From Pavona decussata (lineage: Eukaryota), in assembly GCA_977016875.1 (NCBI GenBank), contig CDRNST010000214.1, forward strand, positions 3,844,001 to 3,908,000: a stretch of DNA of 64,000 nt. The letters are read 5' to 3'. The notes beneath the pieces were generated by a model, which worked only from the letters and a program-made list of their open reading frames with translations, was not told the origin of the DNA and did not search any database. Numbering within the stretch: the stretch's first letter is position 1; each line of letters starts with the position of its first letter. The translations under genes and the position numbers were made by a program. Positions 11,056 through 58,242 of this stretch are shown one piece after another.

Positions 11056-11552
11056 CATATAATCTAAAAAAAGAGCAAGGCTGATTTCACGGTCAGGGAA
11101 GTATATTTTCCAATATTTCGAAAGGCACGGCCTTTCTTCTTCAGGGTATGTTTGAGACTGACCCTGTGGCAAGATACGTTACAATTTAAACAGTTACAAT
11201 AGATACCTGAAAAAAGGCTAAAGTTACATAAACAAAAACGTTACAATTTGAAATTTGAAAATACAACTGGTAAATAGGTATAAGCTAACGTTACAACGTG
11301 GTAGACAAAACAAAATACGTAACAATGAGTTAATTACATAACTTAGGAAGATGAAAGACGGGAAAAATGTTCATGTCTCATCTCTCCTATTAAGACCTAA
11401 GGGTTCAATAGTTTGACCTCTGTCGATGAGGTATGCCTCTCTAGCTTTGCGTACACTGTCACGATTAGATTTGATGAATTCGAGGGGAATTAGTAGCATG
11501 TCAGAAGCGTTATGGTCGTTAGAAAGAAAATGTTCTGAAACTGTGGTGGGTT
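11056..11552 (-). repeat. Inverted pLTR copy of 14132-14628
   Basis: 497-bp near-perfect inverted repeat; I saw two mismatches by eye. Confidence 0.95.
11110..11146 (-). ncRNA. Minimal type I hammerhead ribozyme (inverted pLTR copy)
   Basis: Exact reverse complement of 14538-14574. Confidence 0.75.
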
Positions 11553-11567
11553 CCCAAAGGCCTAATC

Positions 11568-14313
11568 ATGAAATGTCGACCAACGTTTGAATCATCATCC
11601 TGTGAACAGTTACAGCGTCGATGGACAAAATTACTGACAAGAACATCTCGCGAAATGATTAAACTCCTTCAAATACAATGCAAGAAACACTTGACACTGC
11701 TAACTTCAGAATTTAATTCTATCCTACATCAACTCAAATCTACGTGCTCTGATTCTACATTTGTTCACATTAAACACTTTCTTCAGACTTCGGCAGCCGA
11801 ACTATCTCATGTACTCTTATCTAGAAAACGCAAGAAACAGTCCTCAACCGGTGAGTATGCCGCTCGCGCTTTTGCTCGTACACGCCAAAATAACCGTCCT
11901 AACCGACCCGATAACCAAAATAACCGTCCTAACCGACCACAACCTACTGTCACCCATTCGCAGTCACCTACTGACGCATCCACTAATCACATTCAACCCA
12001 TTAACACCACTGCTAATAGTTCCACACCCATACGCAATCATAGACGTCGACGCAAACGGAAAACGACAACTAACAGATACTGGAGACGCGACAATCATAA
12101 CATTCAACTAGACAGTAACGCAGTTATTAACTTAAGCAATGTCACGACTCTAACTCAAGACGAGACTCAACTGCTTGCTAGGGGCCTTTCTTTTTGCCCT
12201 ACGCCACGCCAAATTGACTGGACTGAAATCAGAGCTGATTTTTTTGAGTTCAGCCGACGTATGCGACTCCTTGAGTTTTTTCATGACTACCCTCCCCAGA
12301 CCAATCTTAACCCATTTCGTCCCAAAGGTACATGGACCCCTCCCCCCCACAGGGACCCAGCACTCGACACTTTTTTAGACGCCGTGGAACATGACCTTTT
12401 CAATGTCACACCAGCCCCTGTACGTGACAATTTGACAACACGCGAACGCGATGCTCTCAAACGTCTCCGCAGACGCACTGACATTGTCATCAAGTCAGCA
12501 GACAAGGGCTCGGGTGTAGTTGTTATGGACCGTAACTGGTACATTGACGACGAATGTTCACGACAATTAAACGACCCTAAATTCTACAAAACCTTAGACA
12601 AAGACATCACCACTGACATTCAAAAACGCATACGAATTTACGTAGAACGCATGCACCGTGACAAGATTATTGACGATCACAGGTAAACGTTTTTTAATAC
12701 TGACTGATCCCAAACCCGGACGATTTTACATACTACCCAAAATACACAAATAAGGTAACCCCGGACGTCCCATTGTTTCCAGTAACTCTCACCCTACAGA
12801 ACGCATCTCTCAGTTTGTAGACTATCACCTCAAACCTCTGGTACAGACTACACAATCCTTCATAAAAGACACTACACACTTCCTTAACAAACTCCAACAA
12901 CTCGGACAATTACCCAATAACGCCATTCTTGTCTCTCTGGACGTTTCTTCTCTCTACACCAACATACCTCATAACGAAGGCATCAACGCGTGTCGACACT
13001 TCCTCGAAACACGTAACCGCACCCCTTCTACCATAAGTTCCGAAACTTTATGTGACCTCATACGCATGATCCTTACCATGAACAATTTTACGTTCAACGA
13101 CAAACACTATCTACAGACTCACGGAACTGCTATGGGAACCAGAATGGCTCCTTCTTACGCCAATTTGTTTCTCGCCAAATTTGAGACGGACGCATTACTA
13201 CGTGCTCCATTTCAACCATACATATGGTGGCGCTTCTTCATGATATGGACACACTCTCTCGACGACCTCCAAACCTTCACTACTTATCTCAATAACATTC
13301 ACCCCACTATTAAATTCACATCCAATTATTCTCTCACATCTATACCCTTTCTGGACGTCAGTGTGTCTCTCTATAACGGCACTATCACTACCGACCTTTA
13401 CACTAAGCCTACTGACAAACATCAATACTTGTTACAATCTTCATGTCATCCTAGACACACTAAGAGAGCCATTCCATTCAGCTTAGCTCTCAGACTTCGA
13501 CGTATTTGTTCTTCTGACGAAACTTTTAAACTCCGAACAAACGAACTCAGAACCTATCTCAACAAACGGGGATACAATCTTTCATTCCTCAACCAAGAAA
13601 TAGGACGTGTTAACGGCATCCCACGTTCCGACGCTATAGCTACGAAAGACACCTCCGACACCAACCAACCTATAAGAGTACCCCTTGTCGTCACATACAA
13701 TCCAGCCCTTCGTTCTGTATCATCCATTATTCACAAACACTTCAACATCCTATCTTCATCTCCCCGCTGCGCAAACGTTTTCAAAGCCACACCTCTTGTT
13801 GCCTTCCGACGGACCAACAACCTGAGTGATTTACTTGTTAGCGCCAAACTACCTAATCCCACACAAAACAACCTACCCCATGGATCTTTTCGATGTGGGG
13901 ACAACTGTTTAACTCGCAACTACATAACAGACGGACGTACCAGCTACACATTTCATTCTACCGGCGAAACTAGACATATTACTCATCATATAGACTGTAA
14001 CTCTAAAAACGTTATTTACATGGTACACTGCAACCGCTGCCACAAACAATACATAGGAGAAACAAAACGACGACTTAAAGACCGTTTTAACGAACACCGT
14101 AGACCAGTCGACAAACAAACAAACAGTTCCAAACCCACCACAGTTTCAGAACATTTTCTTTCTAACGACCATAACGCTTCTGACATGCTACTAATTCCCC
14201 TCGAACTCATCAAATCTAATCGTGACAGTGTACGCAAAGCTAGAGAGGCATACCTCATCGACAGAGGTCAAACTATTGAACCCTTAGGTCTTAATAGGAG
14301 AGATGAGACATGA
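11568..14313 (+). pseudogene. Disrupted PLE ORF (RT-GIY-YIG)
   Basis: Frameshift near 12686, in-frame TAA at 12751 (KIHK*GNPGRP), and the catalytic motif reads WWRFFMIW, lacking the expected (Y/F)IDDI residues. Confidence 0.9.
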
Positions 14314-14574: not shown

Positions 14575-14918
14575 AAAATATACTTCCCTGACTGTGAAAT
14601 CAGCCTTGCTCTTTTTTTAGATTATATGTCTAAATTAGAAATTTTAGCCTAACAGGTTCTTAAAATTCAGGTTCTTACTCGCGGGCTTTTGCTGTAATTA
14701 TAACAATTGTTGTGGTATAAAGAAAAAAATTATGACGTGTATAATGTTTAAATCCACTGTCCAAATTTGAGTCCATTCCATTCTACGTTTATGGTGAGGC
14801 GATCGGGGGATTTTCGGTCCGGAGATCAAACTCTTCGCTCTGGCGGGAAAATAATGACGAATCAGTGTGGAGCCTGGGTACGAAAAGGGAAGGAACGCCT
14901 GACATTTTTAGCAGCATC

Positions 14919-17900
14919 ATGGCGCAGAAGTCGCTGAAGACTGTCACCGTGTTCTGTGGTTCGACATTAGGCAATGATCCGAGTTTCAAGGAATGTGCTA
15001 AAGGTACGGTCCTTTAGAAAATATCACATTTTGAAATGTGGTTAAACTACGCGTTACAGTCAATCGAATGATCCATTTTGGGTTTTACGCAATCAAGATT
15101 ACATGTAAAAGTTTATAAACTTTATAAATTAAAGTACATTATGAATATTTCCAAGAAAATTTAATAGCGTTATATATACAATGTTGTATCGTTTATTGCA
15201 AAAAAATTTCTTGCCTTGTCATTGAATGACCTGAGAAGTTTTGAGGCAAAGAGTTGGTGATGGCTGCAATATATCTAATCCATTACGCTTTTCACTGCTG
15301 TCAATCACTGCAGCGGGCCTCTGAGAGAACAAAAAACATTTCTCTCAACAGGGTCAAAAGGTCACGTCTGTGTGCTGTGATTGGTGGATTTTGATTTACT
15401 TTGTCTGTTTCTGTATTTTTGTGGTCAACTGGTTGTCGCCATAATTATGATTGACAGCAGTAAAACACACAAATCATTAGTTAGGGTTGAAATTCAAAGT
15501 CTGCTTGTTATTGGAAGGTGCAGTAAAGCTAGCATCCCTTGACAACTCAAAAAATTTGAACACTTTGTAAAATTTGGCTAATGCTGAGGGGGCAAAGCAA
15601 AATTACTGGGATCCTAGTGATATGTTCAGCAAAATTATTTAGAAAACAAACATAAAATCCCAACTATGAGGTCAGCTTTTCTTCATAATTTATTTAATAG
15701 TTACCTCATCTACCATGAGTGAAGGTCAGTAAACCTTCTGGAAATGTGGTCCTTGGAAGGTCAAATACAGAACTTCAAGTTGGATGGTAGGTCAAACCTA
15801 ACCCTGTGATTTGTTCCAATTTTCTTTATTTTGTCTTGTAGCCCTTGGTCAGTGCCTGGCAAAAAATAAGATTAATCTCATATATGGTGGTGGAACAGTG
15901 GGACTTATGGGAACTATAGCCAAGACTATGTCTGATGAAGGGTGTGAGGTCACTGGATTTCTTCCTGAATTCTTCCTTAAGAAAAGTAAGCACAACAAAC
16001 TTTTAATCTTCATATTTAACGATGTGGAACACAGAATGGTCAGGTTCTTTAGGGAAAAGGATGTATGATCTAGAATGTTATGTTATGTATACATCGATAT
16101 GAAGTGTAACATCTTCTAAGTTATCACCTGATCTTGCCCCTCCCCCCTCCCCTCTTCCCCCAGGAGGGCCCTTTCCTGCATCACCAGAGTACTGACACCT
16201 TCCTGTCACTCAAATGTTGCCCTTTACTTGTTTGTTGTCTGGTGATGTCGCAGTGTAGCAATATTGTTTCCAAGTGCAGACAATCTGCTCTTGAAAGACT
16301 TCATTGATCAAACATTTGTTTTCATGGGGAAATTTCCAGGAACTGTCAAGGTTGATTTCGTATTAAATTTTGTAATAATTTATGATCTTTGTTACAATTA
16401 AATTGGCTTCTAAACAGTAATACTGTGAGTAAGTAATGTATATTGATGTTTTATTTCAGCTGGGGGAGAGTTAGATAGTGTTGGCAAGACAGTAGTGGTT
16501 GAGGATATGCACACTCGGAAGAGAAACATGCTAGAACAGGTGAGCCCTGGTAGACTAATGGGTGGTGCATGATCCGATGCAGGTATGGATCTAGACCAAT
16601 TTACACCATTTTATTGAAAACAGTCAGAGTTCTTATAACAAATGGACATTTTAAGAATAAAAGAAAATTTCCAGGTTTAAGTAAGGAAAATGCCTGCCAT
16701 AGTGACTAGAAAACCCATTGCAAGTAAAAGCACTTTTCAGGCACTAAAACTTTAAAATTTCCTGGGGTAGCATGCCTCTGGATCCCCCTAGAACCTGATG
16801 CTTTTATAGCATTGGTACGCACATCATAAGAAAATGGTCACATTTTTTCCTGGATCCGCACCTGCAATGGAGCTTTGGCCGTATGGGCCAGCTGGGCCTG
16901 AAGCGTGATGCCACCTCATAGAGGTTGGTTGGATTTGCAGCATCAATGGGTTAAGGCTTTAAGTCAGCTGGGTCTGAAAAAGAATACAGATTTTAGTAGT
17001 TTTCATTTGTCTAAACTAATTGTATCATTAATTTTAATTTTAGGCAGATGCTCTGATAGCTTTACCAGGAGGATATGGCACCATTGAAGAGCTACTGGAA
17101 ATGATCACATGGTTAGAATGATCGTTCTAATTTCATTAAGTTTGATTGAAAAAGTCTGTAAAGTTTATCCACAAGTTATATACGTGTACAGACTGCGATC
17201 ATAGGTCCAGAATCTGAAACACCTGTTATGCCTTGATGAGAACCTGGTATAACTGGTGTTATTCACAATTTCTTAAGATATAAGGGTTGGTTCAATAAAC
17301 GCTGTATTAGTTAGTGTAAAGAATCATCTATGGTGGTGGAGTAAATTCTGTTCAAAAGAAAACTTGAAGTTCTGCAATTAAATCTGGAAACGTGAAAGCT
17401 GTGACAGTGTGGGATTACTATGTGCTGTTCCCCACATTAGATGCACAGCTAATTACAGCTGTTATATGTAAGTTACACACATATCTTGAAAGTCTACCCA
17501 AACTCATTTTCAGTATGGCTTGTTAATCAAACAGTAGCCGGCCAGCCAGTCATCAGCATTTCAGTCAGTCAGTCAGTCAGTCAGTCAGTCAGTCAGTCAG
17601 TCAGTCAGTCAGTCAGTCAGTCACCCAGTCAATCAACCAAGCAGTCAGTCAGAAGGCCAGCCAGCTAGTCAGTCAGTAAATCAGTCAGCAAGTAATGACT
17701 TAATTCAGTGAGAAGTTAATAAATTTAGCACATGACAGTAATTTAGGGTTACTATTGGACTGGTGGCCCTGTCTTAAAAATAAACTTCATATATTAATAT
17801 TTACAATATTCAAACATGCAACATCCCTCCTTTGTTTTACAGGTACCAGCTGGGACTCCATGATAAACCAGTAGGACTGTTAAATGTCGCCAATTACTGG

Positions 17901-19070
17901 GGAGGCTTGATAGATTGGGTTTGTGCAAAGATTTTTATTTTAAGGTTGTGTGTTAGTTCTGCAATAAAATAAAGGGTGTGGTGAAACTAATAACCTAAAT
18001 TCCAGGTTGGTCCACCCACGCATTTTTATATATACCCTCTTATTTTTCAAAGTGCCATTCATTTTCCTGAGTTCCCTTGTGCCTCAATATGAAAATTTTT
18101 GATAGAAGTTGCTGAATTATGCAAAGTATGCCAATTTATTCAAATTTATGTATTTTTGGGAATGCTAATGCCTGAACTGTTTTCTCTTCANNNNNNNNNN
18201 NNNNNNNNNNNNNNNNNNNNNNNNNNNNNNNNNNNNNNNNNNNNNNNNNNNNNNNNNNNNNNNNNNNNNNNNNNNNNNNNNNNNNNNNNNNNNNNNNNNN
18301 NNNNNNNNNNNNNNNNNNNNNNNNNNNNNNNNNNNNNNNNNNCAACCTCAGCCTCAGGTGGTTTTCAGGTTGGTCCTGAGTAAAAATTATGAATTAACAG
18401 TGGGTAAAAAATTATTAAATATAAAAAAAGTTAAAAAGAGACTCACAGTAAAATCCTAAGATAGAGTTAACGATGTAACAAAATTAGATAAAATAGTTGA
18501 CAAAAGCTATGCAATTTGAACTGCTTTTTTGCTGGTAACCTGTTATGAACAAATGCCACCAGTTAAATTTTTATTGACAATGTGTAAGACATGAGATGTA
18601 TAGAGTGTTTTTCTGCACGGTGGTCATATCTTTCGGTGGAGCAAATCAATATAATGATTTTCCTGTGAGAAATGAATCTTATTTTTATATATGCAAGTAT
18701 CTTTTATTGTTAAGCTCCTCTAATGTGGCCACCATGAACATGCACACTCAAAACAGTAGTAATGACATGACATAATCATGATAGGCATAATACTTGAAAA
18801 AGTTACTGAGAGAGTGCCAAAACAAAGTATTGCAGTTTGCTAATAATATGGCAAATCTCTCTTTCATTTGAAAATGAAAATCTCACTTGGTAATAAAACT
18901 CTAATTCTTTTCAAAATTTTCAGATTCAGAATGCTGTTAAAGAAGGATTTGTGTACGGCGAAAACAAAGACATTGTCATAGTTGCTGATGACTGCGAAAC
19001 TTTATTAAACAAGCTGCAAGAACGTGCCTCTTCCAAAGAACGAACTCACAGACTTCTACCGAATTTGTAG
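14919..19070 (+). CDS. LOG: LONELY GUY (LOG) family nucleoside-5'-monophosphate phosphoribohydrolase, type I-like, 199 aa, 6 exons
   Basis: Exons 14919-15003, 15842-15985, 16460-16539, 17044-17111, 17843-17918, 18924-19070; all GT-AG, phases consistent, 600 nt total. Protein: MAQKSLKTVTVFCGS...LIYGGGTVGLMG...EDMHTRKRNM...[42 protein letters not shown]..., with the PGGxGTxxE signature. Confidence 0.95.
17560..17690. repeat. (AGTC)n microsatellite in LOG intron 4
   Basis: Direct reading. Confidence 0.95.
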
Positions 19071-19745
19071 TATACTGTTCTGTCTTTTTGTATCTGTACA
19101 CAATAACTTTTTCATGTTCCACTGCAGATTAATATGTATGTCAACTTTTATATTACAAAATTGTAAGTGACAACATAATATCCTTTTCAGGAAAATATTG
19201 TCAATTCTCACTTTTGTAAAACCCCCCTCTCAAAAATTATTTAAGTTTGTCACATAACAAGTATTATCCAGTATGCTTTACCTCTGATCATCCATAGATC
19301 AAATGTCTGAGCTTCAGGCTTCAAGTATCGACATTTCTATAGTAGCGCACAACTGTTTCGACCAGTTGACTGTCCAATTTAGCTATTTTCATACATCCAT
19401 TTTAAAATTTCTGTCAAACACACAAGATAAAAATTGTATCAGAGGAAGAAAATGTACTCAAAGTGGCTTTTCAAACAATATAATGTCTTTTTGTTTTACT
19501 TTGTTTGTTGTCGTTGTTGTTTGTTTGTTTGTTTTGATGGACGGGACAGGATCTCTGGGACTACCCAGTAACATTTTCAATCTCTTCACCCCACCCCAGC
19601 TAAGTACATTTTTCTTGTTGAAGTTGTAGATTTCAAGAAGGGTTGACGCTCTAATGGTACCTCACTCCCCTCCCCCCAGCTGCCTGTTGTTCGTTTCAGC
19701 TAGGGACATTTGGTTTGGAATTACATGAGTCTCACAAAAACCAAC

Positions 19746-22181
19746 ATGGCGGCTCCTAAGGCAAAAAGGAAAAAGGACGATAAAACAGAATTGTACGATT
19801 CAGATGAAATCAAGGAAGAAAAAGAAGAAAGTATTTACTTCAAGGACTGCAACAATAGTTTAAAAGCCCAACCGCGCAAAAAATCAAAACTAAAACTGGA
19901 AGAAAAAGATGAAAGCGTTTCTCTAAACAAACTGGGGCGGTCGTTTTATGATCAACCTACCGTAAATTTGGCGAAAAAACTCTTGGGGAAGCTGTTGTAT
20001 CGTATTCTTGACGATGGAGAAGTGCTGTGTGGACGGATAGTTGAGACTGAAGGTTATCTGGGCGAAGTTGACAAAGCGTGTCATGCTTTTGGAGGCAAAA
20101 GAACAGCTCGCAGTGAACCAATGTATATGGCGCCCGGCACAGCTTACGTGTATATAATATACGGCATGTATCACTGCCTCAACATCTCCAGTCAGGAACC
20201 TGGTGCCTGTGTATTGATCAGAGCTTTAGAGCCTCTTCAGGGTGGGTTCAGTGGCTGTTAATCCCATTAGGGGTGGAGGGTGGGGGATTGGACAGAGCTT
20301 ACCACAGTAAAATCCAACAAGGGGTACGTCTTTGACAGCAAATTAAAATCAGTGAAGCACTAGCAATATCTGATGCCTAACCACTTACCTCATAGTTCAA
20401 ATAGAAGAGAGATCCTCGCCGTTAGTATGCAACTTAAGCAGTTGCAAAAAGAAAGCCTGAAAAAAATCCAGGCTTGAATGGGATTCATTCATTTACCTCA
20501 TAGTGTTAAGCATGGCTTTTGAAAATTTCTATCTCTCAAATGAACTGTTTTTGTTGTATTAAAATATCCAGGATTTTGCTCCTGGTGTAGGAATCAGATT
20601 CCAGAGGTGGTCAACAAAATATTTTCCAGGTACAAGTGCTTTGGCGGCTGCTTGGCATGGAACTTCAAAACTCTTAGCGTATCTTCGGCATAACCAACCA
20701 TACAGAATGCACCCCAACCACCCTCTCCCCTCCAATTCTCCTGTCAGTAATGGACTCTAGTAGGGAGATGTATTTCAAGTTATATCCTGTGTAACAGGTG
20801 ATTGATTAATTGTAATCAATCACTTCCAATCAATCTATCAATCAATCAGTCCCTTCTTTGGGGGTGACGTCCCGGGAAGGGGGGGGGGGGGGCACGTCCC
20901 CGTATAGCCCATATAGGGAAGTCCCCCCCCCCCCCCTGGGGGTGACGTGGCCTAGTGGCTAGGGCATTGGACTTGTAATGCTCAGGTCCCAGGTTCAAGT
21001 CTCCCTCTGACCACTAGGATTTGCTTCATGGTAGCCCCCATTTTAAATCCAAGGCTGTCAGTTATTATCACTGACAGGGAAGATATAGTTTCGGTTAGTC
21101 TGAGAATTTTGTAGATGTTTGCATGGGAACGGGCAAGTTTTGTCTTTCTTCATACAAATGTCTGCAAAAATTGCTGCAATTTCAGAACTACATCTTTGCT
21201 ATTTTAAAGATAAAACTCTCGCACAAATTTTAAGCTGCTCTTTCCAGAAGTCTCAATAGTTTTTCATTACCTGTCCAACGTCAACATTCTAAGTTACTGT
21301 GATAAAGGTCTATGCTAGTAGTTCAGCAAATGATAATTTTCCTATACATGCATGGATCCTTCACTTTTACTTCTCGATGTTGCAGGTTAGTTTGGCTGAA
21401 TTAAGTTTGATCTTTGGCTCATCCAGGCAAACTGATTAGTCTGGGTTGACCTCTACTGTTATTCCACGAGTGCGCGTTGGATATGAGATGAAAGATAGCC
21501 AACGAGGTGCACAGCACTGAGTTTGCTATAACCAACTCATTTCCAACAAACGCGAGTGGAATAATATTGTTTTCTTAAAAACAATCAGAAATATTGCTAG
21601 ATCTTGTTGAATTTGCTTTGTAAGAACAAGCAGATGACAATTTATTTCTCGGGCATGGTATAATGGCCAATATACCATGGCCGCTAAGCCAATCAAATGC
21701 CTGGAATTGCATTATACAATGATCCAGTTGTTAATAAAATAGGTTAGCTCATTAATTACAGCATTAATGGTTTTGACCTGGGCCTTATTTTCTCAGGTCA
21801 GCTGTGGTCTTATAAGAAGTCTTATGTTTGTATTTTGCAGGCTTAAACTCTATGAAATCATTCAGAGGAGTACGAAGAAAAGATAGTGGCAGCAAGTTAA
21901 AAGACTCTGAGTTGTGTAATGGGCCTTCCAAACTTTGCCAGGCCCTCTGTATTGAAAAAGCCAACCTCAACAAAGAAGACATGGCTAGCTCAAGTAGATT
22001 CTGGCTTGAAGATGACAAGGATTATCATGAGGAAGACATTACTATTGTAACTTCCACAAGAATAGGCATAGCTTCTTATGGATCTGAGTGGGCGCTCAAG
22101 CCCTTGAGGTTTTACATTTTGGGGAACAAGTGTGTGAGTGTGAAGGACAAGAAAGTGGAGGTTGAATTGGTGTCAATGTAG
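19746..22181 (+). CDS. MPG: N-methylpurine DNA glycosylase (AAG/3-methyladenine DNA glycosylase), ~278 aa, 2 exons
   Basis: Exons 19746-20241 and 21841-22181 (phase-1 intron). Motifs [64 protein letters not shown]. An upstream in-frame ATG at 19725 is an alternative start. Confidence 0.95.
20871..20940. mobile_element. Tiny hAT-type MITE inserted into the head of a tRNA-derived SINE
   Basis: CCCGGG...CCTGGG ends with G/C tracts and an 8-bp TSD GGTGACGT (20863-70, 20941-48). Confidence 0.7.
20941..21060 (+). mobile_element. tRNA-derived SINE head
   Basis: Pol III A-box-like TGGCCTAGTGG and B-box-like GGTTCAAGTC; does not close into a complete tRNA. Confidence 0.6.
21458..21740. mobile_element. 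Hairpin-headed non-autonomous element (possibly Crypton-associated)
   Basis: ~110-bp imperfect palindrome TTATTCCACGAGTGCGCGTTGGATATGAG...CTCATTTCCAACAAACGCGAGTGGAATAA. Family assignment is tentative. Confidence 0.4.
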
Positions 22182-25369: not shown

Positions 25370-28300
25370 TTAATCAAAGGAGACGAGCACTCCAGTAGGA
25401 GGGTCTTGTCTTTCCTCCTTCCTTTCTCTTGATGGTTTTCTCTGCTTTTCATTGATGTTATGAATGACAAGCTTCATCTTTTTCTAAAGAGAAAATTGAA
25501 ATTGCTTACATTTATTTAATATTATTGGTTTCATTCATTCATTTAAAGATTCATCCAACACTTGGGCAGGTCTTATTTTTGAGATGTTGTTCATTAAGGA
25601 ATTGAACCCTGAGTTAAATACTCAGAAAGACTATTCATGCCAAACTCTTTACGTGACTGTGTCTGCGAATACCTCATTGCATTATCATAACATAATTATT
25701 TTTTCTTTTTATTTGTGTCTCTTAGGAATTCTTCCTACATTTTATAGTCGTTCCTATTTCTTTCATTCTTGACTTCATAATGATGTAAAGCAAAAGTCGG
25801 AACATCGTCACATTTGAAACTTTTAACCAAGATGGTTTTAAACTTTTATCACAATGTTTTATAGTTTAAGAACTTTCTTCTGCACCTCATCATCAATGCA
25901 CTTGGTCACTTCCCTTTCCCTTTGTAGACTACAACACTACAAATATTGTGTCTGAGCAACTGAAAGTGTCATGTAAATACAGGGAATTAATCCCTGCATC
26001 CACAACATTAGGTGTATATAGCAGGTGACTGGCTGATCACCTCCATATCAAGAGAGTTTTGTGCCCTTTACATCCACAAAAACAACATCACAAAGCAACA
26101 AATTACCTGGTACTTCCCCCACATTGCAAATATATCCACTAACTTCTCTTCTGGATCCAGACACCTGTGAACTGGTTGCAATAACCAAGAGAAAGTTAAT
26201 AGAATCACAACAAAACGTATAGTTGTTACAAAGTCTGTAGACACATAAGCATATCTGCAGATGATCTCCATCATTAATTTTTTAGCATTTACATACCAAA
26301 GTAAAGGGAGATAGGTATACCAGGCACCTGAAGGTAAGTAAGTACTGGTTAATTCTGTACAGGTCTCAGCTAGAAGTTTACTCCCCCTAAAAGGATGCTA
26401 ATCTAGCACAGGTTACCCAGCAGGGAGTGACTGAGAAAATTACTAACCCCAACCCCAACCCCCCCCCCCCCTCCACCCCACCTATCTGGATGGTATGCTT
26501 GTCCATCACAGGATACACACATGAAGTGACTTGGAGTATTACTACTCCCCCCACCCCCTGGATAAGATCCTAGTCTTATATTTACAGGATATGCACCATG
26601 AAGTGACTAAGAGTATTACTTCTCCCCCCCACCACCCCCTCGATGCAATGCTAGTCCAACACATGAGTTACCCCTCCCAATTGGGTGTTGTGCATTGTGA
26701 GAAAAGTAAACTTACCAGAACCATCTACTGATTCTTCCCACATTTCCAGAGCTGCTGCATCAATCTGTCCACCTAAAAAACTCTTGTGACTTGTATACTG
26801 GCTGCATGTCACATGAAACAGAATGGCAGCATGTAAGACAAATTGCACTAAGACCATTTATATTGTGTAAGACCATTGGCACTAATGAAACCACAGATCC
26901 AAAAAGAACTCATCAATAATTACAGTCAACTCTCTCATAGCGACCACTTCTCGGAAGGGACTACCTCCCGTAAGCAACCACTTCGTAAACAACTGTTTTG
27001 TTTCTCAGTTAAATACTGTTTCAAGAGCTCTCTCGTAAGCGACCACCACTCAAATTTCTCAAGGGACCGCGACCACTTTTTAGGCTAGAAATTACACATA
27101 TTCTTTTGTTCTCTGTTTCTGGTAAGCGACCTCATGTATGATCATTAGTAAATCATTATTCATCATTAGTAAACCATTATTCAGAAGTGACAAAGTTCAA
27201 TTTTTTAATGACGCTACCCAGGACTGCTGACAGATAATAACAGTTTACAAACAGAGAAGATGGCTATAATTAGATCTGAAGGTAAACGGGAATTGTTACA
27301 GTGATCTGTTCCAAAATGTTATACAAAGTTTCATCATAAGAATGAATAGATGTGAAAAAATCAAATAAATTAGTTTCTATTTGCCTATTATTTTAGCTGC
27401 TAAGGTTAATATTTTTATCTAATTAATTAATCAATCCAGTATTAGGCTTATTTTCCTTTTTCCTGTAAATGACCACCTGCCGTAAGCCACCACTTTGTTG
27501 TGCTCCAAGGGTGGTCGCTCACAGAACAGAGTTCACTGTATCAATGGAACAAAAAGGGATTTTTTAAGTTTACAAATGTCAAAGACAATATAATACTAGA
27601 ACAAAGTTTCTGCATTCAAGATCTTTTTTGGCTTCTGCACAAGTTAGATTTAATAACATTCTTTAGTTTTGTTTTAACTGTGGCACAACCATTGTCAAGA
27701 ACTGGTATTTCTTCCTTGTTTGACCGTATTGCAATATACAAATGAGAAACATGTGAACCAGACCTGCAACATTGATTAACAAACTGCATTTAGAAAGCAA
27801 CCATTGTCAATAAAAAACTTACACCAACCATTGTAAGGTTTGTGTTTCTAGTTTTATCAGCTTGGCAAAAATAGCAAACCAGTAACTCACCGCATGACAT
27901 CTGACACCAAATAAAAGGATTCTACTTTGCAAGTCTGCAAATAAAATAACAAAAATTATGAATTTTAAACCTTATTTTCAAACATTCCAGGCTAGTGGAG
28001 CCATGTAATTCTGTCTTACCTTAAATGTTTTGTCTGGTTTGAAAACTTTTAATGTGCTCATATCCTCAATGATAGGAACTGGTAGACTGCTGCCAGTCTG
28101 TTAAACAAAAATAACTAGAGGTGAGTTGAAAGAGACCCTTCTCCAAAATGGTGGCCAAAAATTCAAATAAGTTAAAAATAAAAATGTATACCAGCACTAC
28201 AAAGAGCCCTTTTACTTTAGTAACCCTGCAAAGTTTCAGCATATCAGGTGTAATGTCAGCTGAGAAAAATAATGTAAGTTGAAAAATGAAAAATTTACAG

Positions 28301-32321: not shown

Positions 32322-35300
32322 ATAGTAAATAAATAAAGTTTTACATAGTACCTATCCATTTCTTTACTAAATGCTTTACAATACTTTTGAAGCAACTGCC
32401 AATAATTATGAAAACTACTTATAAAGTTATTATACAAAACATAACACATATATTAAGTAAAGCTCTGAAATTAAATTACAAGCAGTAAGCTGCCTATCGA
32501 AGATACGTTTCAGCCTGCATTTAACATTAAAAATTATGTTCATTTTATGTTACAACTCAATTGATCTGTCTATTGAAAGTTTGTTCCACAATCTAGGAGC
32601 AGTTGTAGAGAAAGCTCTGTAACCATACCTCTTAAGATCGAATACAGGTATGTATGTATGTTGAAGCAAGGAACAGAATGACCAGTAGATGAGTACAGAG
32701 GTCTTTGTGAATTTAGTAAGTTAATTAATTACTTCAGTAAACAGAATGTGCACACCTTACACAGATTGAATAAACAGAAATCTATGCTCAGAAAGGTGCA
32801 GAACAGGTTTTTTTCAGTGTTCATTATAATATTAATAATACTGCTGTACCTAAGTCAACTGTCTTGTGAAAGTCAATTTTGGCTTCTATCGAAACTGCTA
32901 AGAATTCCTCATCAGGCACGGGTAATCCTTTGAAAGACTAGGAGTAATAGGAAGAAGGATGAAATAAAACAAAATGAATGAAATGATCTCAAAATATAAT
33001 AACAAATGTAAGGGTCAATATACAAGCCTACGGAAATGATTCTCCAACCCCTTGAAAACATTTAACATACATTCATGTATACAGTCACATATTAATTTTG
33101 ACTGAAATTATTTAGTATGCCAAACAATGTGTTTGTACCTCAACAAATGCTTCTTTCTCTTTCTCAATACAACTTTTGAGTTTTTTAACCCAAGCTTCTT
33201 TATCTGACTCTGAAGATGCTAGAAATTTGTAGACTTGTGTGGGTGTTCCAAGAATAAACACTGCAATAGGAAGAACACTTATCAATACCATAACAACATC
33301 ACACTTCTGTATAAAAGTATTACAGGATGGCAATGGCCAAAAGGCATATCTTTCTTTTGGTAACAATGAATTTTAAGATAGATGCATTTTCTCAGTCAGT
33401 GTAACAGGTATACTCAGAAAAAGAAAATCTGAGTTATAGATCTCTTAACAGGAGTCGATTGCTCTACCACTGAGCTGCAGGAGACTTCTGGAGTTTATAG
33501 GCGATTAAACTAAGTTCATGAAAATTATGACAAACATCCTGCACACTGCGAAAGAAATGTGAAGTTATATTTCAAGCCTGGTGAATAAATAATAGATGTA
33601 TTTTTTCAGTCAGTGACACAAGCATACATAGATAAAGAAAAACTGAGTTCTCCCAACAGGAGTTGAACCTATCACCTTCCAATATTATTATTACTAGTTG
33701 AGATGCTCTACCACTGGCCTTATCCACCAAGACTCCTGCACTGCTCACAACATTATGCGTTAGTACAGCACTTAAATAACTGTAAGTTGTTAGTAACACC
33801 CTTTTCAAGGTTTAACAGGTTACGGAATATTATCTTATATAGTGGAACCCTGCCTTACAACCACCTTGTTGTATGACCACTTTTATGTTCCCTGAATAAA
33901 TTGATAGTCCAGGCATCTACTTAGTTTTACAACCCCATTAATCCGACCACTCCGTTATTACAACCACATTTTCACAGCCTGGAGGAAGTTGTATTAATGT
34001 AGCCCGAAGGTAGTTGTATTATCAATGTACCATGTGTAAATCAAAGAATAAAGTTGTAAAGTTGTAAGGTTCTGTTGTAACACTGAAAACAAAATAATAT
34101 GCCTTGCATTTCCAGAGCACCATAGCAACAGACACTACACTGATAAGTTCACCAAAAAACTTGAATACTGTAACAGGACTTACTAGTATCTGGTGGATTG
34201 TTGTAGTATGCACTTGGTGATGCAATCCAAGCTTGAGAAAGAGGAATGTTGTCTTTTAATTTATAGGTTTTCTTTCCTGTTATGAGATTTTCTGATGCCT
34301 GAAAAAGGAAAATGCAAACAAAATCATCTTCAGCTGGAGGTGTTTCTCACAATATTCAAAGTCTACTGCCAGCACATAAAGGAAAAAAAATTACTGATAA
34401 CTTGTACAGGGTGTTTGACCTTACCAAGCCAATTAACAAGATGTTATTAAATAGGAAGAGATATCTGAAAAGAAAGAAAAAGAACAATACAGGATGAAGT
34501 AATTTTTTAAGTAGATCATTAAAACCTTCAGCTTACAACATAATAATAATAATAATAATCAATTTATATAGCGCTTTTTATATAACATTCAAAAGCGCTT
34601 ACAATATAAAAACGAAAAATTTAGTCAAAATCAATAAAATATAACATTTAAGAATAATCAATCAAACAAAAAGTAAGAAATAAAATAAAAAAAGTAAAGA
34701 ATAATCAGATGTCATATGCTTTTTTAAACAAAAATGTCTTCAAGTGTTTCTTGAAAGTGTTTAAGTTCTTGGCAGTCCTAATTGCCAGAGGAAGCTTATT
34801 CCACTTGGATGGACCAGCAAAAGCGAATGCTCGATCACCAAAAGTCTTACATTTGGTTCGAGGCACCTCTAATAAAGTGAGGTCATTAGATCTCAAAGAG
34901 CTTCTGATTGATGCCTTTTCCCTGATGAGATCACAGATATAATGTGGAGCGATACCATTAAACGCTTTGAAAACAAGTAGTAATATTTTGAATTCGATCC
35001 GAAACTCTACGGGTAACCAGTGAAGATCTTTTAGATAAGGTGAAATGTGACTAAATTTGGGTACTAGACAGACGACTCTAGCTGCAGCATTGAGGACTTT
35101 TTGGAGCCGATCCAGTTGATATTTTGGAAGTCCAGAAAGGAGAGAGTTGCAATAATCCAAGTGAGATGTCACAAAAGCATGAATTAATATTTTGGTGGCC
35201 TCAGTGGAAAGAAATTTTCTTATTTGTCTAATGTTGTAAAGACCCTTAAAGGCTTTGTTACAAATGTGTCCAATGTGAATGTCCATCGCCATGTGCTCAT

Positions 35301-38300
35301 CAAACCAAGATCCCAGATTTCTAGTACTCTTTACAGGTTCAATGATGGAGTCCCCAACCATTATAGAATTGATGTTTATTTTGGACAGCTGACCACGAGA
35401 GCCGATAATCAGAAATTCAGTTTTAGAGTCATTTATCATAAGACGATAAGAGACCATCCAGGCACGAATATCAGCGACACACTTTTCAATCGTACTAACT
35501 GCATTATCCTGAGCCAGCTGTGATTCCGGTTTAAAAGAAAAATAAATCTGGGTATCGTCTGCAAAGGCATGTGCAGATGGAAAGTCTTTTCTTATGACTT
35601 CAAACAATTTAGATTACATATCAAATTTTGATATGTTGTAAGCTGAAGGTTTTATTTTATTCACCCTACATGCAGTGATTCTACGTATTCCATGTAAAAA
35701 TCGATAAAAAATCACTTTATTTAAGTGCCAATGTATTTAGGGCGGAGCACTAATTGGGGACACTTTCCAGATCAAATTGGAATTTAGACCTGTTGGATTT
35801 TGAGAAGAGGGGAAAACCGGAGTACCTGGAGAAAAACCTCTTGGAGCAAAGACGAAAACCAACAACAAACTCAACCTACATATGATGCCAAGTCCAGGAA
35901 TTGAACCCAGGCCACATTGGTGGGAGGCGAGTACTCTCACCACTGCGCAATCCCGCTCCCCCATTCCCCTGCTCTTAATTACTGGGTATTTACCATTTTT
36001 TATGGATCATTATTCACTTGATTAAACTAACCCCAACAAAGTAAGTTAGATCATCCTATAATGACTCAAAGTATCTCATTATTATCCACCTAGTCAGTTT
36101 GGTATTAAATTTCCATAATAATCACTGTTATAATCACACCTTCTTCTCTTACTTGATTAACACTGGTCTAACCCCTTCTCCTACCAAACAACTTGACAAA
36201 GTTCCCAGTTTTAGATTTCAGACAAACTTTGGTTTGCTACCCAAACGAAAATCAAGAGTCCCTCTCTGTGCCTGAAAATAAATTTCAACTGACCTTTCAA
36301 CTGTTTCATGTACCATCCCACCCTCACTTGATCCTGTGAATTTCTTGGTCACTCGCTCAACTTCACCCTCATAAACGTATGTGCTGTAACGCAAATAGAG
36401 TTTACTTATTTATTTATTTTACAACAGTAACCAGTTGCAATCCCCCTTTAAACAAATATGTGTAATAAATTATTGAAAATCAGTACAAGATGTTAAAAAG
36501 TATAAAAAGTATAAGAGTTCAGAATCTTCTTTTTGTCCAGTTTCTATATCATGCACTTAACCATACAGAGCACGTTTTGAACATGAACAGGATTTGGATG
36601 GGAAAGAGGGAACTGACCCTTCAAAGAAACCATAAAAAGTCGTTATCACAGGGAGATTTTTAAAAGTTCTCTTAGATAAGCTGCAGCCCAAATTTGGAAT
36701 CAAACTTTGGGTTAAAAGGAATGGCTTGTCCGCTAGTTTGCAACCCACTCAAAATGTTTTGTAGTAGAAGGTAGCTGGAGTAGAAGACAGCAATAGGTCA
36801 TTTCCGAGTTGCTTTGAACTTCGTTATGAAAGTGAGGCTTTGTGTATAATTTTTGTTCATTGAAAATTAGTTTTCATTGATATGCAAACAAAACTAATTT
36901 TTACATGAAAAGCTTTGCACTTCGCCTACTTTCATAAGGAGGTTTAAAGCAGCTCAGAAATGGCCCATTGCCTGGTAGCTGGGGAATTTGATGAAAGGTC
37001 AGTGTGAAGTACACTGTAGATAGCACATGGTAAACAAGCAACTGAAAATAAATATAAATTAATATCTTTTCTGCGGTCTGAGCTTGAGGATGTCTTACTC
37101 CAATCCCTTAACAACAACTCTTAAGCCCTTTACCTTGTTATAAATGTATCTCCCAATTGTGAAAGCTCTGTGTCGCTGTCGCTATCACTGTTATCTGCAC
37201 TCTGAGGCTGAGTACCACGTGGGGTAGTCGAGGAGCGGCGAGGAAGATTAGGAGACGTGTCAATAGTGTCCATCAAAGGAAGGGATATCCTATTCACAAC
37301 ACAAATATATATCAATATCATTAGTTAATTAATATTAATATCAATTAATCATTAATTATTTATCAATCAATAATCTTGCACCGGTATTAGTAGGTTTCTT
37401 TTACAGTTCACAGGTCACTGTGATAACTGTATATAAACAAGTTAACCAGGATCCTAGCCCTTAACTCCACACTAAAAGCTAATTCAGGCCTACAGCATAC
37501 TAACCCTCTTGGTTATATACCAGGGCTCAGTTGTTCGAAAGCTGAATAGCACTGATCTCTGATTAAAAGTTTACCAAGGTTTTTATAAGAATGTTTTTAT
37601 AAGTTAATTTAAAGCTAATGGTAAAGAGAAGTCTAAGTTTAAACTGAGGAACAAAAATATTTTTTAAAGAATCTTTATTGATTAACAATTAAACTCAAAT
37701 CAAAGTTCACGTTAACCAAGGACTAGCTTAATCGGGCTTTGACCAACTGGGCCAAATACAGTTACAGTGACCTTTACTTGGGAACTGTAGAATGTGACCG
37801 GTAAAAAAGACCCGTCCCACACAAGCTGCGAACAAAATCTGGAAAGGGTACCCAAAACTCTGACTGTATTAAATCTAATTTTTTTATGTATAGTACATCC
37901 ATGTATGTTTCCTTTGAGGTCCACAAATAGAAGTGATGATGTCATATCACATGGGAATTAATACATCATGATTCCCAAGTGACAGCCATCTTGAATTCAC
38001 CACCTTCAATTTCATGGTGTCCCCAAAACTTCAGAAAACACCAAAATTGACCAATGACGAGAAGAACACAAAAATGCTCTAACAACATGAAGATTACTGT
38101 AAGAAAGTTAATTTTCATTTCTTTTTATTTCTATTTCTAAAAAGCCTGACTGTCAAAATTTGGTTGCCATGGTAGCATCAAATATAGTGAACACTGACAT
38201 ACCAAACCAAATTGTTTTCAGGTAACTTTTGAAAAAGTCACAAAGTTTGATGGTATTTGCTTAAACGTTGAAAAAGTTATCAAAGTTCAAAGTCGGTGCT

Positions 38301-51939: not shown

Positions 51940-53127
51940 TGCTCTTTGTTGCGTTTAGTATTACAAGATTTCGTGACAAAAATCACTGCTCAATGGCCCG
52001 TTCTCGAATGATCTCTCACGAACTGTTAATTCAGAGGTATTTCTGGAGAAAACTGTTCTCAGTTGTTCAAATTTAGGAAGAAATCATGACCCAACAGACT
52101 CAAGACGCCGTGACGGATCCATTCCGTATCAAATGTCACCAGTCAAACACGGGCCTCCTTCTATAAAATTCAAAACATCACACAAGTACAAGTGCTGCCA
52201 CAATACCCTGTGAGTGTCCCAATGTTATCTACCAAATTGTTTCTTTTCTGTAAACAATCCTTTGAAGGATTGGCTCGCCTGTATTTTGAGGTACGGAAAC
52301 ACAAAACTGTGGTTTCTTTGAAATTTTCGCGACAACGGGAATTTCGATTTAGGACACTTTCGGAAACTGAGGAACGAGCTAAAACGAAGTGGAAATCGTT
52401 TATTCGTCGTGACGTCATGAGCTACCGAACATCCGCCGATTGTTTCTTACCCAAATTCTTGCCGTACCGAATTCCGGGTGTAAACACGTTTCAACCAATC
52501 GGTGCTCTATATTGATGTATTAAAAACAAACATATTCCGACACTTCCGCTGGAAACCGAAACACTTACAAATCTTAAACTCCTTTTTTATATTTATATTA
52601 CATTAATTATGGAACGCGCCAGACCGCCTGTTTTCTTTGCCATAGATGGCAAACAGGAAGTAATTGAAATGTAAATTCGGTCACCAAGTATGCGCCCTCA
52701 TTTTAAGTTGTTATCGGGCCTATATCTATTTTTATAGCTTCCCGTGCTCAACTCTAATAGGAAAATGGTTGAATGAAGCTCAGTCAAGCTCAGCAGAATG
52801 AAGGACTCGTCCCAGAATTTTATAAACGTCACATTTCTGTCTTGTCTAATTTAGAATTAAAAATGGGTAACTTTCCGNNNNNNNNNNNNNNNNNNNNNNN
52901 NNNNNNNNNNNNNNNNNNNNNNNNNNNNNNNNNNNNNNNNNNNNNNNNNNNNNNNNNNNNNNNNNNNNNNNNNNNNNNNNNNNNNNNNNNNNNNNNNNNN
53001 NNNNNNNNNNNNNNNNNNNNNNNNNNNNNNNNNNNNNNNNNNNNNNNNNNNNNNTCCTCCTCATCTTTGTCCTTCAGTTCTTCTTCTTCTTCTTGAACTG
53101 ACAAAATTCTCAGAGTCCTTCAGAAAC

Positions 53128-56700: not shown

Positions 56701-58242
56701 AGCTAGGCTTTAACTCAAAACAAATCAAGCAGTAAACAACAAATTGTACCGGCATTGCATTTAAAGGTGTCGTTACAAGGGACAAATTTAACGGAACATA
56801 ACACCCGAACAACTTTTAACGAAACATTTTTTGCCGCCGGTAACATATTGCAGATTTTGAGTCCCATGTCACTTTACGATAAGTCAATCGCGTGGAAAAC
56901 AAGTTAAGTGTGAGATGAGAATGGAATGAATCTGTACTTCTTATATTCAGTTTATTTTTTGCCATTCACCCCTCGATGTTGGCTAATTTACTGAGATTTT
57001 CGGCCAGTTTTTCTGGAGCTTGGATTAGATTCCACGCTAATAAAATGAACTTTACCACATGAAGTGTTAAATCAAGCCCTTTTTTCTGAATGAAAAATGT
57101 TTCAGGGGCACAAACGTGACTGAACTCGAACTTAAAATTCTACAACCAACCTGATTATAAGATCAGAGTAATTACACCAAATCCCGCCCATCCTTGTATC
57201 GTCCATCCGTTTTGCAAGAGCAGCTGAATCATCATCATCCAATAAGTGCAGCCAGTTTGCTCCTGTCTCAATGGTAACTCCTTCAAACTGTACTGCGTGA
57301 ATTCTACCACCAATGTGATTTTTAGCCTCAAGGACATAGAAATCCGTAATGTTGTTATCTAGAAGGGTCTTAGCAGCTGTTATTCCAGATAGGCCTGCAC
57401 CAAGAATGAGGACTTTGGTTTGGATCCTTCTTTCCTCTAGTGCTGATGATGATAGTGATGACGATGACCAGAGGGTGGCAGTCAAGAATAAAAGGTACTT
57501 TGCAAAGAAGCTCAAGTTCACCTGAAACATGATCTGCTGATGCTCTGGAAACAAGACGGCAGTGTTAGTGATCGAAAAAAAATTTATGGATATAGGTGAA
57601 GTCGTGCATGAACCTCTGGCGGCCGAAAATTAAGCTCGATTTCTGTACCATGAGACAATTAGCAATATATTGCTACAACCCCAGGGGATGGGATGCTAGT
57701 CCACCACAGGGTTCCCTGAAGAGAGACAACGGACGTGAAGTTGTTGGAATTCCGCTACTCACGACGTATGAGATTACTTTTTGTTCCAGAGATAAGTTCC
57801 TAGATGTCCTTCAAAAGTCCCTTTCAAACCGAAAACAAATACAGTCAACTCCCTTTATTGCGGACACCCTCGGGACCGCGTGTTAGTGTCCTAGCGAGAG
57901 TCCGTAATACAGTCAAACGTCTGTAATTTATTTTTGTGGGGGATTTAGCTGCTGTCCGTATTATCGGGGCGTCCGTAATAGCGAGGTGTTCGCAAGGCGA
58001 GAGTTGACTGAAAATCATGTGAAATTGTGACTAGTTCCAGTTCCTACTCGTTTACAACAATCTGTCCAATCAGACCAAAGGACAGGCAGGCCTTACGAAG
58101 TCTATAAATGCATTGATTAGCAGTACATGAATAAGTAATTTATAGTCTTCGCATTCATATTTTTATCCTTAGCACTTTCAGGGTCTTTCAGTAATGAAAG
58201 AGATTTCCGTGTCCAAATGAATGAATAAAGATGATGATGATA

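What the first reader, a model, noticed from the sequence alone, without database searches (positions are those of the whole stretch)
14919..19070. Intact, intron-containing LONELY GUY (cytokinin-activating type) enzyme in an animal genome
Seen in sequence: a 6-exon, 199-aa ORF that the ORF track misses, with GGGxxGLMG, MHxRK and PGGxGTxEE all intact. Established: these motifs carry the catalytic Arg/Glu and substrate-pocket residues of type I LOGs, which release free bases, including cytokinins, from nucleoside monophosphates. LOGs are known from plants, bacteria and fungi and are not part of the standard vertebrate or insect repertoire. Five spliceosomal introns and metazoan neighbours (RhoGEF, TMEM184) argue against contamination. 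Inference: a probable cnidarian host could convert N6-isopentenyl-AMP from tRNA turnover into free cytokinin, a possible signal to algal symbionts, or it may simply salvage damaged or modified nucleotides.
Basis: partly seen in the sequence, partly recalled or inferred. Interest (0 to 1): 0.8.

Follow-up and report, generated by a model that had tools for sequence, protein, structure and literature searches.

The report
Coral LONELY GUY nucleotide-cleaving enzyme gene
This is a real, intact, six-exon coral gene for a LONELY GUY (LOG) enzyme that splits modified AMP into free base and ribose phosphate; sea anemones, soft corals and jellyfish carry it too, it is already named in coral genome annotations, and nothing ties it to algal symbiosis.

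Summary
Window 14919-19070 (+) carries six exons (600 nt, 199 codons plus stop) with five GT-AG introns. GGGTVGLMG, MHTRK and PGGYGTIEE are intact. So are the other residues that the CgLOG structure paper assigns to AMP binding and the putative prenyl pocket.

The N gap (18191-18342) lies inside intron 5. Exons 5 and 6 abut without loss on Arabidopsis LOG3 and on coral orthologues.

The gene belongs to the coral host:
- It was found once in the 602-Mb genome.
- dN/dS against two other corals is about 0.1.
- All five intron positions and phases match both Nematostella paralogues.
- A spliced Acropora-type RNA contig matches all five junctions.

Orthologues are already named in databases, for example [quoted passage not shown] in Orbicella and Acropora. 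Others occur in Nematostella, Actinia, Paramuricea and the jellyfish Rhopilema. One coral paper lists the gene as raised in oral tissue.

So it is an old cnidarian type-I LOG, not a new kind. Species I know to lack algal symbionts keep it, which argues against the symbiosis idea. Vertical descent versus ancient transfer is unresolved. Substrate and role are untested.

The scan noted only this same stretch before, not other DNA. I never joined the exons; all searches went exon by exon or through natural orthologues.

The parts
14919..15003 (+). Exon 1 (ATG; 28 codons plus 1 nt). Holds VFCGS; the Ser at 14961-14963 corresponds to CgLOG Ser19, a phosphate contact.
   Evidence: residue role from PMC4979012
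15842..15985 (+). Exon 2. Holds the glycine-rich loop GGGTVGLMG (15886-15912).
16460..16539 (+). Exon 3. Holds MHTRK (16507-16521): the catalytic Arg (CgLOG Arg99) plus the Met, His and Lys of the adenine and prenyl pocket.
17044..17111 (+). Exon 4. Holds PGGYGTIEE (17065-17091) with the catalytic Glu (CgLOG Glu122), then the equivalent of Glu125. Its last 2 nt begin the Trp codon (CgLOG Trp129), which exon 5 completes.
17843..17918 (+). Exon 5 (W)[25 protein letters not shown].
18924..19070 (+). Exon 6, the C-terminal helix region, ending in the TAG stop.
18191..18342 (.). Assembly gap (N run) inside intron 5. It touches no coding sequence. I neither filled it nor looked it up.
19710..22181 (+). 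Downstream neighbour, a two-exon methylpurine DNA glycosylase (MPG, PF02245). The same adjacency occurs in the orthologous loci L002/L003. It was not found in the 5.7 kb (L005/L006) or 3.7 kb (Nematostella L007) of DNA held downstream of LOG.

Best explanation
The locus is the coral host's LOG gene, found once in the genome scan. It encodes a 199-aa type-I LOG-family (TIGR00730 / PF03641) nucleoside 5'-monophosphate phosphoribohydrolase.

By homology it works as a Rossmann-fold homodimer. The GGGxxGLMG and PGGxGT loops hold the phosphate. The Arg of MHTRK and the last Glu of PGGYGTIEE cleave the N-glycosidic bond, releasing free base and ribose 5-phosphate. Met, His and Lys of one subunit, together with Glu and Trp of the other, line the pocket proposed to take an N6-prenyl group. 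All five are identical to those of the plant, Claviceps and Corynebacterium enzymes.

The likely substrates are N6-modified AMPs, such as isopentenyl-AMP from tRNA turnover, and possibly AMP itself. The genome has a tRNA-type isopentenyltransferase to supply the former.

Shown here: the gene model, its conservation, the intact active-site residues, host origin, and presence in the sea anemone, soft coral and jellyfish sequences sampled.

Inferred only: the activity, the dimer, the substrate range, and a housekeeping or salvage role in clearing modified purine nucleotides. The gene most likely descends from the LOG of early eukaryotes and was kept in Cnidaria.
For: - Six in-frame exons with GT-AG introns.
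- Collinear family hits exon by exon.
- Found once in G000 by an exon-level scan.
- The best solved matches are type-I LOGs: AtLOG3 E 3.6e-50 for the 86%-identical orthologue P0172, against 5.6e-14 for 5wq3, the weakest listed LOG chain, which I take from my own knowledge to be a type-II LOG. Single exons match at up to 7e-8.
- P0172 scores 176.9 bits on TIGR00730, against a cut-off of 96.35.
- The residue roles come from mutagenesis and structure work in PMC4979012. Every residue named there is present in the window.
- Orthologous six-exon loci exist in other corals. dN/dS is 0.10 and 0.08.
- Exon lengths 144/80/68/76 and all five intron phases are identical in both Nematostella paralogues.
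- A contiguous 198-aa ORF on a 1.7-kb contig assembled from a public sequencing run, too short to be genomic and so read as RNA, matches the window exons junction by junction.
- The cnidarian gene tree follows the species tree as I know it. One cnidarian clade is not rejected (p-AU 0.40).
- A tRNA-type IPT is present in G000.
Against: - No enzyme assay exists for any animal LOG.
- No RNA data from this species were available.
- Prenyl-pocket identity does not prove cytokinin specificity. Non-plant LOGs also cleave AMP (the Dictyostelium, Claviceps and M. tuberculosis values quoted in PMC11228631).
- The bacterial equivalog model NF058542 is not reached (116.6 of 300 bits).
- No AATAAA or ATTAAA lies in the 690 bp after the stop.
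- Deep placement is unresolved: the backbone of both trees is a polytomy. None of the coral intron positions is shared with plants or a chytrid. Vertical descent is therefore favoured only by parsimony.
Confidence: 0.85

Rival explanations
1. Ancient horizontal transfer. A bacterial or algal/protist LOG entered the cnidarian stem lineage, gained five introns and was then inherited vertically. The enzyme would be the same; only its origin differs.
For: - Among the best 120 hits of each of three searches, the only animals are cnidarians. The next hits are plants, a chytrid, Bacteroidota and Methylobacterium at about 50% identity.
- No coral intron position or phase is shared with Beta, Riccia or a chytrid.
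- A low-support branch (56/58) puts cnidarians next to the bacterial clade.
Against: - The most similar bacteria form their own starred clade (95/96), which excludes all cnidarians.
- The papers read here treat Claviceps, yeast and Dictyostelium LOGs as orthologues, and a chytrid and Basidiobolus LOG turned up in my searches. Inheritance with later loss therefore needs no transfer.
- The hit lists are cut at 120, so absence from other animals is not shown.
Confidence: 0.3
2. Symbiosis signal. The coral uses LOG to make free isopentenyladenine or another cytokinin base as a signal to its algal symbionts or surface microbes.
For: - The prenyl-pocket residues are identical to those of cytokinin-activating LOGs.
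- A tRNA-IPT is present.
- No CKX or CHASE-domain match was found in the host, so any free base would not be sensed or degraded in the plant way.
- In Pocillopora a LOG-named gene is raised in oral tissue facing the seawater (PMC13581030).
Against: - LOG proteins are kept in Nematostella, Actinia, Desmophyllum, Paramuricea and Rhopilema. I know these to lack algal symbionts. The shared gene structure was checked only in Nematostella.
- The oral-tissue signal is not specific to symbiont-bearing cells.
- No metabolite data exist.
Confidence: 0.08
3. Contaminant or dead gene. The reading frame belongs to a microbe or alga in the assembly, or it is an unexpressed relic.
For: The genome-scale searches first returned only exon-sized fragments. 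There is no RNA from this species.
Against: - Five spliceosomal introns sit at positions shared with Nematostella.
- The gene lies at least 3.9 Mb into a contig (C214), next to an intron-bearing MPG gene, as in another coral.
- dN/dS is about 0.1 with dS above 1.
- Spliced transcripts exist in related corals.
Confidence: 0.02

Closest known systems
Arabidopsis LOG3 / LOG8 (PDB 2a33, 1ydh), the classical plant cytokinin-activating LOGs
   Same: These are the best solved matches (E 3.6e-50 and 4.6e-46 for the coral orthologue P0172). They share the size, the GGGxxGLMG, MHxRK and PGGYGTxEEL motifs, and the same five pocket residues.
   Different: Identity is about 45-50%. The gene structure is unrelated: six plant introns against five coral introns, with none at a shared position. 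Plant enzymes reject AMP (quoted in PMC11228631). The coral enzyme is untested, and no match to the plant cytokinin-degrading (CKX) or CHASE receptor domains was found in the host.
Named cnidarian orthologues: Orbicella faveolata and Acropora millepora 'LOG4', Nematostella vectensis predicted proteins, Oculina, Desmophyllum, Actinia, Paramuricea
   Same: Coral proteins are 76-86% identical to the window exons, with junctions at the same residues. Nematostella has identical internal exon lengths and intron phases. They fall in one gene-tree clade.
   Different: The names are automatic best-hit labels, not orthology to plant LOG3 or LOG4. Nematostella has two tandem copies, whereas only one match was found in this genome. 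The window protein has three extra N-terminal residues.
Non-plant LOGs with wider specificity: Dictyostelium DdLog, Claviceps CpLOG (5ajt), Corynebacterium CgLOG (5its), yeast YJL055W
   Same: They share the type-I fold and the catalytic pair. CpLOG is the best single-exon PDB match (E 7.3e-8). This group shows that a LOG can act on AMP as well as on cytokinin nucleotides and can serve in base-analogue detoxification. It is the most likely functional model for the coral enzyme.
   Different: CpLOG is longer, with extra loops. Their host organisms either make cytokinins de novo or were assayed directly; the coral has neither kind of evidence.
Type-II LOGs (PDB 5wq3, assigned to type II from my own knowledge) and PpnN-type nucleosidases
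   Same: They belong to the same superfamily and carry the same PGGxGTxxE motif.
   Different: The match is much weaker (E 5.6e-14; PpnN E 0.045 on exon 4 alone). Type-II proteins are hexameric and, from my own knowledge, longer, with added regions that this gene lacks.

Membership tests
LOG family, type I (TIGR00730 / PF03641) | PGGxGTxxE nucleotide-binding motif with the catalytic Glu | tested here: met
   PGGYGTIEE at 17065-17091. Exon 4 alone scores 34 bits on PF03641, above the 27-bit cut-off.
LOG family, type I (TIGR00730 / PF03641) | Catalytic Arg in MHxRK | tested here: met
   MHTRK at 16507-16521. Its role is set out in PMC4979012.
LOG family, type I (TIGR00730 / PF03641) | Glycine-rich loop GGGxxGxMG and the N-terminal VFCGS strand | tested here: met
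   profile positions 24-65 of TIGR00730
LOG family, type I (TIGR00730 / PF03641) | Whole-protein score above the curated cut-off | tested here: inconclusive
   I never joined the window protein. The exon scores on TIGR00730 add up to about 93 bits with e1 and e6 unscored, against a cut-off of 96.35. The 86%-identical natural orthologue P0172 scores 176.9.
LOG family, type I (TIGR00730 / PF03641) | Type-I size and architecture (about 180-220 aa, no added N-terminal region, nearest to the dimeric structures) | tested here: met
   199 aa. The exons tile the whole fold. Type-I structures match at E 1e-35 to 1e-50; 5wq3, which I take to be type II, matches at 5.6e-14.
Classical cytokinin-activating LOG | Putative prenyl-pocket residues Met, His, Lys, Glu, Trp (CgLOG 96, 97, 100, 125, 129) | tested here: met
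   M, H and K lie in MHTRK. The E is in ..EELLEMIT. The W is the codon split between exons 4 and 5, TG|G (residue list).
Classical cytokinin-activating LOG | Phosphoribohydrolase activity on iPRMP or tZRMP, with preference over AMP | not testable with these tools
   This needs a recombinant enzyme assay.
NCBIfam NF058542 (bacterial cytokinin riboside 5'-monophosphate phosphoribohydrolase equivalog) | Score of at least 300 bits | tested here: not met
   108-117 bits for the cnidarian orthologues. This is a narrow bacterial model, and I do not file the gene there.
Plant-type cytokinin system | Cytokinin oxidase (PF09265) and CHASE-domain receptor (PF03924) in the same genome | tested here: not met
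   No match in G000. The search goes exon by exon, so weak or fragmented genes could be missed. A tRNA-type IPT (PF01715) is present.

The most novel reading that the evidence does not exclude
Cnidarians as a group use a classical LOG, with an intact prenyl pocket, to turn tRNA-derived isopentenyl-AMP into free cytokinin bases that act as real signals. The signal would work within the animal or go to its microbial and algal partners. LOG would then be the missing enzyme step that reviews of cytokinins in animals leave unnamed.
Probability: 0.12. Interest if true: 0.75.

Novelty: new member of a known kind. Interest (0 to 1): 0.35.

Why it matters
Reviews of cytokinins in animals credit production to tRNA isopentenylation and unspecified interconversion, and they name no animal LOG (PMC12298617, PMC9003334). 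Yet the anthozoans and the jellyfish sampled here carry a well-conserved classical LOG.

That gives cytokinin and coral biologists a concrete, cheap experiment: express the protein, assay iPRMP against AMP, and knock the gene out in Nematostella.

For genome annotation, the finding confirms a clean gene model across an assembly gap. It also shows that the plant-style labels (LOG3, LOG4, LOGL1) given to cnidarian genes are best-hit names and not orthology.

In itself the gene is an ordinary member of a well-known family.

Tried and rejected
**Shared introns as a test of common descent.** I mapped exact exon structures for Nematostella (two genes), Beta vulgaris, the liverwort Riccia and a chytrid. 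Plants share six positions among themselves and hexacorals share five. None is shared between groups, so the test is uninformative on origin.

**Trees.**
- Two careful trees leave the backbone a polytomy.
- An AU test does not reject one cnidarian clade (p 0.40).
- The grouping 'cnidaria plus bacteria against other eukaryotes' is already a 56/58 branch, so it is neither shown nor rejected.

It is confirmed in the window and in L002/L003. MPG was not found in the 5.7 kb downstream in L005/L006 or the 3.7 kb downstream in Nematostella. I read it as local synteny, not a unit.

**HMG-box ORF 24 nt upstream of LOG on contig L011.** It is absent near LOG in the window and in L002/L003, so the contig is probably chimeric.

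**Searches that led nowhere.**
- The representative search with exon 2 returned mostly exon-sized fragments. These were useful only as handles to orthologous loci.
- Look-ups of the Paramuricea and Rhopilema genes found nothing, so octocoral and jellyfish intron positions are unknown.
- Literature searches for animal LOG found only one passing mention.

**Not done.**
- Structure or dimer prediction. I judged it unnecessary at 45-50% identity to solved LOGs.
- Checking the RhoGEF and TMEM184 neighbours.
- Filling or looking up the gap.
Full report
**1. What is there**

Reading window 14700-19300 and translating each proposed exon by reference gives six in-frame pieces:
- e1 14919-15003
- e2 15842-15985
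- e3 16460-16539
- e4 17044-17111
- e5 17843-17918
- e6 18924-19070

The lengths are 85+144+80+68+76+147 = 600 nt, which is 199 codons plus TAG. All five introns begin GT and end AG after a pyrimidine-rich tract. The three split codons read GCC, ACT and TGG. The start context is AGCATCATGG. The exons run at 39-48% G+C against 32-40% in the introns.

Every search went exon by exon by reference, or used natural full-length orthologues as stand-ins.

**2. The gap**

The N run 18191-18342 lies wholly inside intron 5 (17919-18923). Three independent comparisons show that no coding sequence is hidden there.
- On Arabidopsis LOG3 (2a33), e5 residues 2-24 align to 134-156 and e6 residue 2 to 159, which places the junction at 157|158 with nothing missing, although the e6 match on its own is weak (E 0.12).
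- On spliced coral proteins e5 ends at residue 148 and e6 begins at 149.
- In an orthologous coral locus the same intron is only 188 nt long and has no further exon.

The gene order across the gap (LOG, then MPG) is the same as in that other coral. Only the true length of intron 5 remains unknown.

**3. Family**

Exon by exon, the pieces hit TIGR00730 at profile positions 24-65, 77-95, 97-118 and 121-144, and PF03641/PF18306 in the matching order. An alignment of the six exon peptides with full-length LOGs shows that they tile the whole fold without overlap or hole.

The best solved relatives of exon 2 alone are Claviceps LOG (5ajt) and Arabidopsis LOG8 (1ydh), at E about 7e-8. P0172 is the closest natural spliced orthologue, at 86% identity to the window exons. 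It matches AtLOG3 at E 3.6e-50 and 5wq3, which I take from my own knowledge to be a type-II LOG, only at 5.6e-14. It passes the TIGR00730 cut-off at 176.9 bits against 96.35. It does not reach the narrow bacterial equivalog NF058542, at 116.6 of 300 bits.

The CgLOG structure and mutagenesis paper (PMC4979012) assigns these residues:
- Catalysis: Arg99 and Glu122.
- AMP binding: Ser19, the PGGxGT backbone, Thr119, Met96, Lys100 and Glu121.
- Putative prenyl pocket: Met96, His97 and Lys100, plus Glu125 and Trp129 from the partner subunit.

Every one of these is present in the window. The Trp is the codon split between exons 4 and 5, so it exists only in the spliced product.

**4. Host gene, expressed in relatives, under selection**

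A whole-genome scan with PF03641 finds only this locus in the 602-Mb assembly. The window starts 3.84 Mb into contig C214.

The representative search with exon 2 returned exon-sized fragments from long eukaryotic contigs. Fetching them gave orthologous loci L002/L003 and L005/L006. In these, all six exons recur in the same order with full-length exon matches and different intron sizes. Nei-Gojobori counts over those exon blocks give dN/dS of 0.10 and 0.08, with dS above 1.

Full 196-199-aa ORFs sit on contigs of only 0.9-1.1 kb (P0172, P0176, P0177, P0289). The Acropora millepora protein P0288 is encoded without interruption on a 1.7-kb contig assembled from a public sequencing run. These contigs are too short to be genomic, so I read them as spliced transcripts. 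At the DNA level that contig matches the window in six blocks whose ends fall on my five junctions. No RNA from this species itself was available.

**5. Who has it**

Named relatives are:
- Oculina patagonica, Orbicella faveolata ('probable cytokinin riboside 5'-monophosphate phosphoribohydrolase LOG4'), Desmophyllum pertusum and Acropora millepora ('LOG4').
- Two tandem Nematostella genes.
- Actinia tenebrosa ('LOGL1').
- The octocoral Paramuricea clavata.
- Through the metatranscriptome sequence P0093, the jellyfish Rhopilema esculentum.

Coral proteins are 76-86% identical to the window exons, so the host is a stony coral.

Exact splice mapping shows exon lengths of 76/144/80/68/76/141 or 153 in the two Nematostella genes, against 85/144/80/68/76/147 here. 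The intron positions and phases are identical.

In both trees the anthozoan sequences form one clade whose internal order follows the species tree as I know it: octocoral, then anemones, then stony corals. Holding all cnidarians together costs 0.15 log-likelihood units (p-AU 0.40). The gene was therefore present at least in the anthozoan ancestor and probably in the cnidarian ancestor.

**6. Where it came from**

This stays open. After the cnidarians, the best hits are plants, a chytrid, Basidiobolus, marine protists, Bacteroidota and Methylobacterium, all near 50% identity. No other animal appears in the best 120 hits of any search. Those lists are truncated, so absence from other animals is not shown.

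The most similar bacteria form a supported clade (95/96) that excludes every cnidarian sequence. The rest of the backbone is unresolved. None of the coral intron positions coincides with the six plant positions (which Beta and Riccia share) or with the two chytrid positions.

Fungal and Dictyostelium LOGs are treated as orthologues in the papers read here, and a chytrid and Basidiobolus LOG appeared in my searches. I therefore favour descent from an early eukaryotic LOG with loss in other animals (about 0.6) over ancient transfer (about 0.3).

**7. What it does**

By homology the protein cleaves the N-glycosidic bond of a purine nucleoside 5'-monophosphate. The genome encodes a tRNA-type isopentenyltransferase as a 564-aa single ORF, so isopentenyl-AMP from tRNA turnover is available. 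No cytokinin oxidase and no CHASE-domain receptor was found.

Non-plant LOGs that have been assayed on both substrates prefer cytokinin nucleotides but also cleave AMP. The yeast homologue was found in screens for resistance to base analogues (PMC11228631). I therefore rate a housekeeping role in clearing or salvaging modified purine nucleotides as most likely, with free isopentenyladenine as a by-product.

The symbiosis idea is weakened by the gene's retention in cnidarians that I know to lack algal symbionts: Nematostella, Actinia, Desmophyllum, Paramuricea and Rhopilema. In Pocillopora acuta a gene annotated as LOG3 is among the top genes raised in oral tissue facing seawater (PMC13581030). 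That shows expression but says nothing specific about symbiont-bearing cells.

**8. Novelty**

The gene is an orthologue of genes already named in public annotation. It belongs to a thoroughly studied enzyme family. No animal LOG has been assayed, and reviews of cytokinins in animals do not mention one. That is a gap worth a simple experiment, not a new kind of system.

The scan's other notes on this genome cover only this same stretch.

Noticed in passing
window 11568-14313 (+), with an inverted fragment near 11371-11552: Two long intronless ORFs end about 600 bp upstream of the LOG start codon. One is 372 aa with no Pfam hit; the other is 415 aa with a C-terminal GIY-YIG nuclease domain. The 2.7-kb stretch is a young, high-copy repeat in this genome: at least 50 places at 95-99% identity, many cut short at the 5' end, plus a tandem array on contig C36 with a period of about 3.8 kb. 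This fits a Penelope-like retroelement.
   Followed up: partly
window 19710-22181 (+): A two-exon methylpurine DNA glycosylase gene (PF02245) begins about 640-675 bp after the LOG stop (the ORF opens at 19710). The pairing recurs in the orthologous coral loci L002/L003. MPG was not found in the 5.7 kb downstream in L005/L006 or the 3.7 kb downstream in Nematostella L007.
   Followed up: yes
L011:380-997 and 1022-1618: A short contig assembled from a public sequencing run (probably RNA) carries an HMG-box ORF only 24 nt upstream of the complete Acropora-type LOG ORF. The HMG gene is not near LOG in the window or in L002/L003, so the contig is probably a chimera.
   Followed up: partly
L007 (Nematostella) 8001-32863: Two tandem LOG paralogues. 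The first has a 14-kb first intron and an extra partial copy of the last exon at 26191-26280.
   Followed up: no
G000 contig C68, locus L012:691-2385: The coral's tRNA-type isopentenyltransferase (PF01715) is a single uninterrupted 564-aa ORF. That is unusual in a gene-dense, intron-rich region, so it may be a retrogene or simply intronless.
   Followed up: no
window 55420-57554 (-): Exons of a flavin amine oxidase (PF01593 / PF13450). There is also a reverse-transcriptase fragment at 34705-35607 (-) and a second N gap at 52878-53054.
   Followed up: no
window 17570-17640: A (CAGT)n microsatellite inside LOG intron 4.
   Followed up: no
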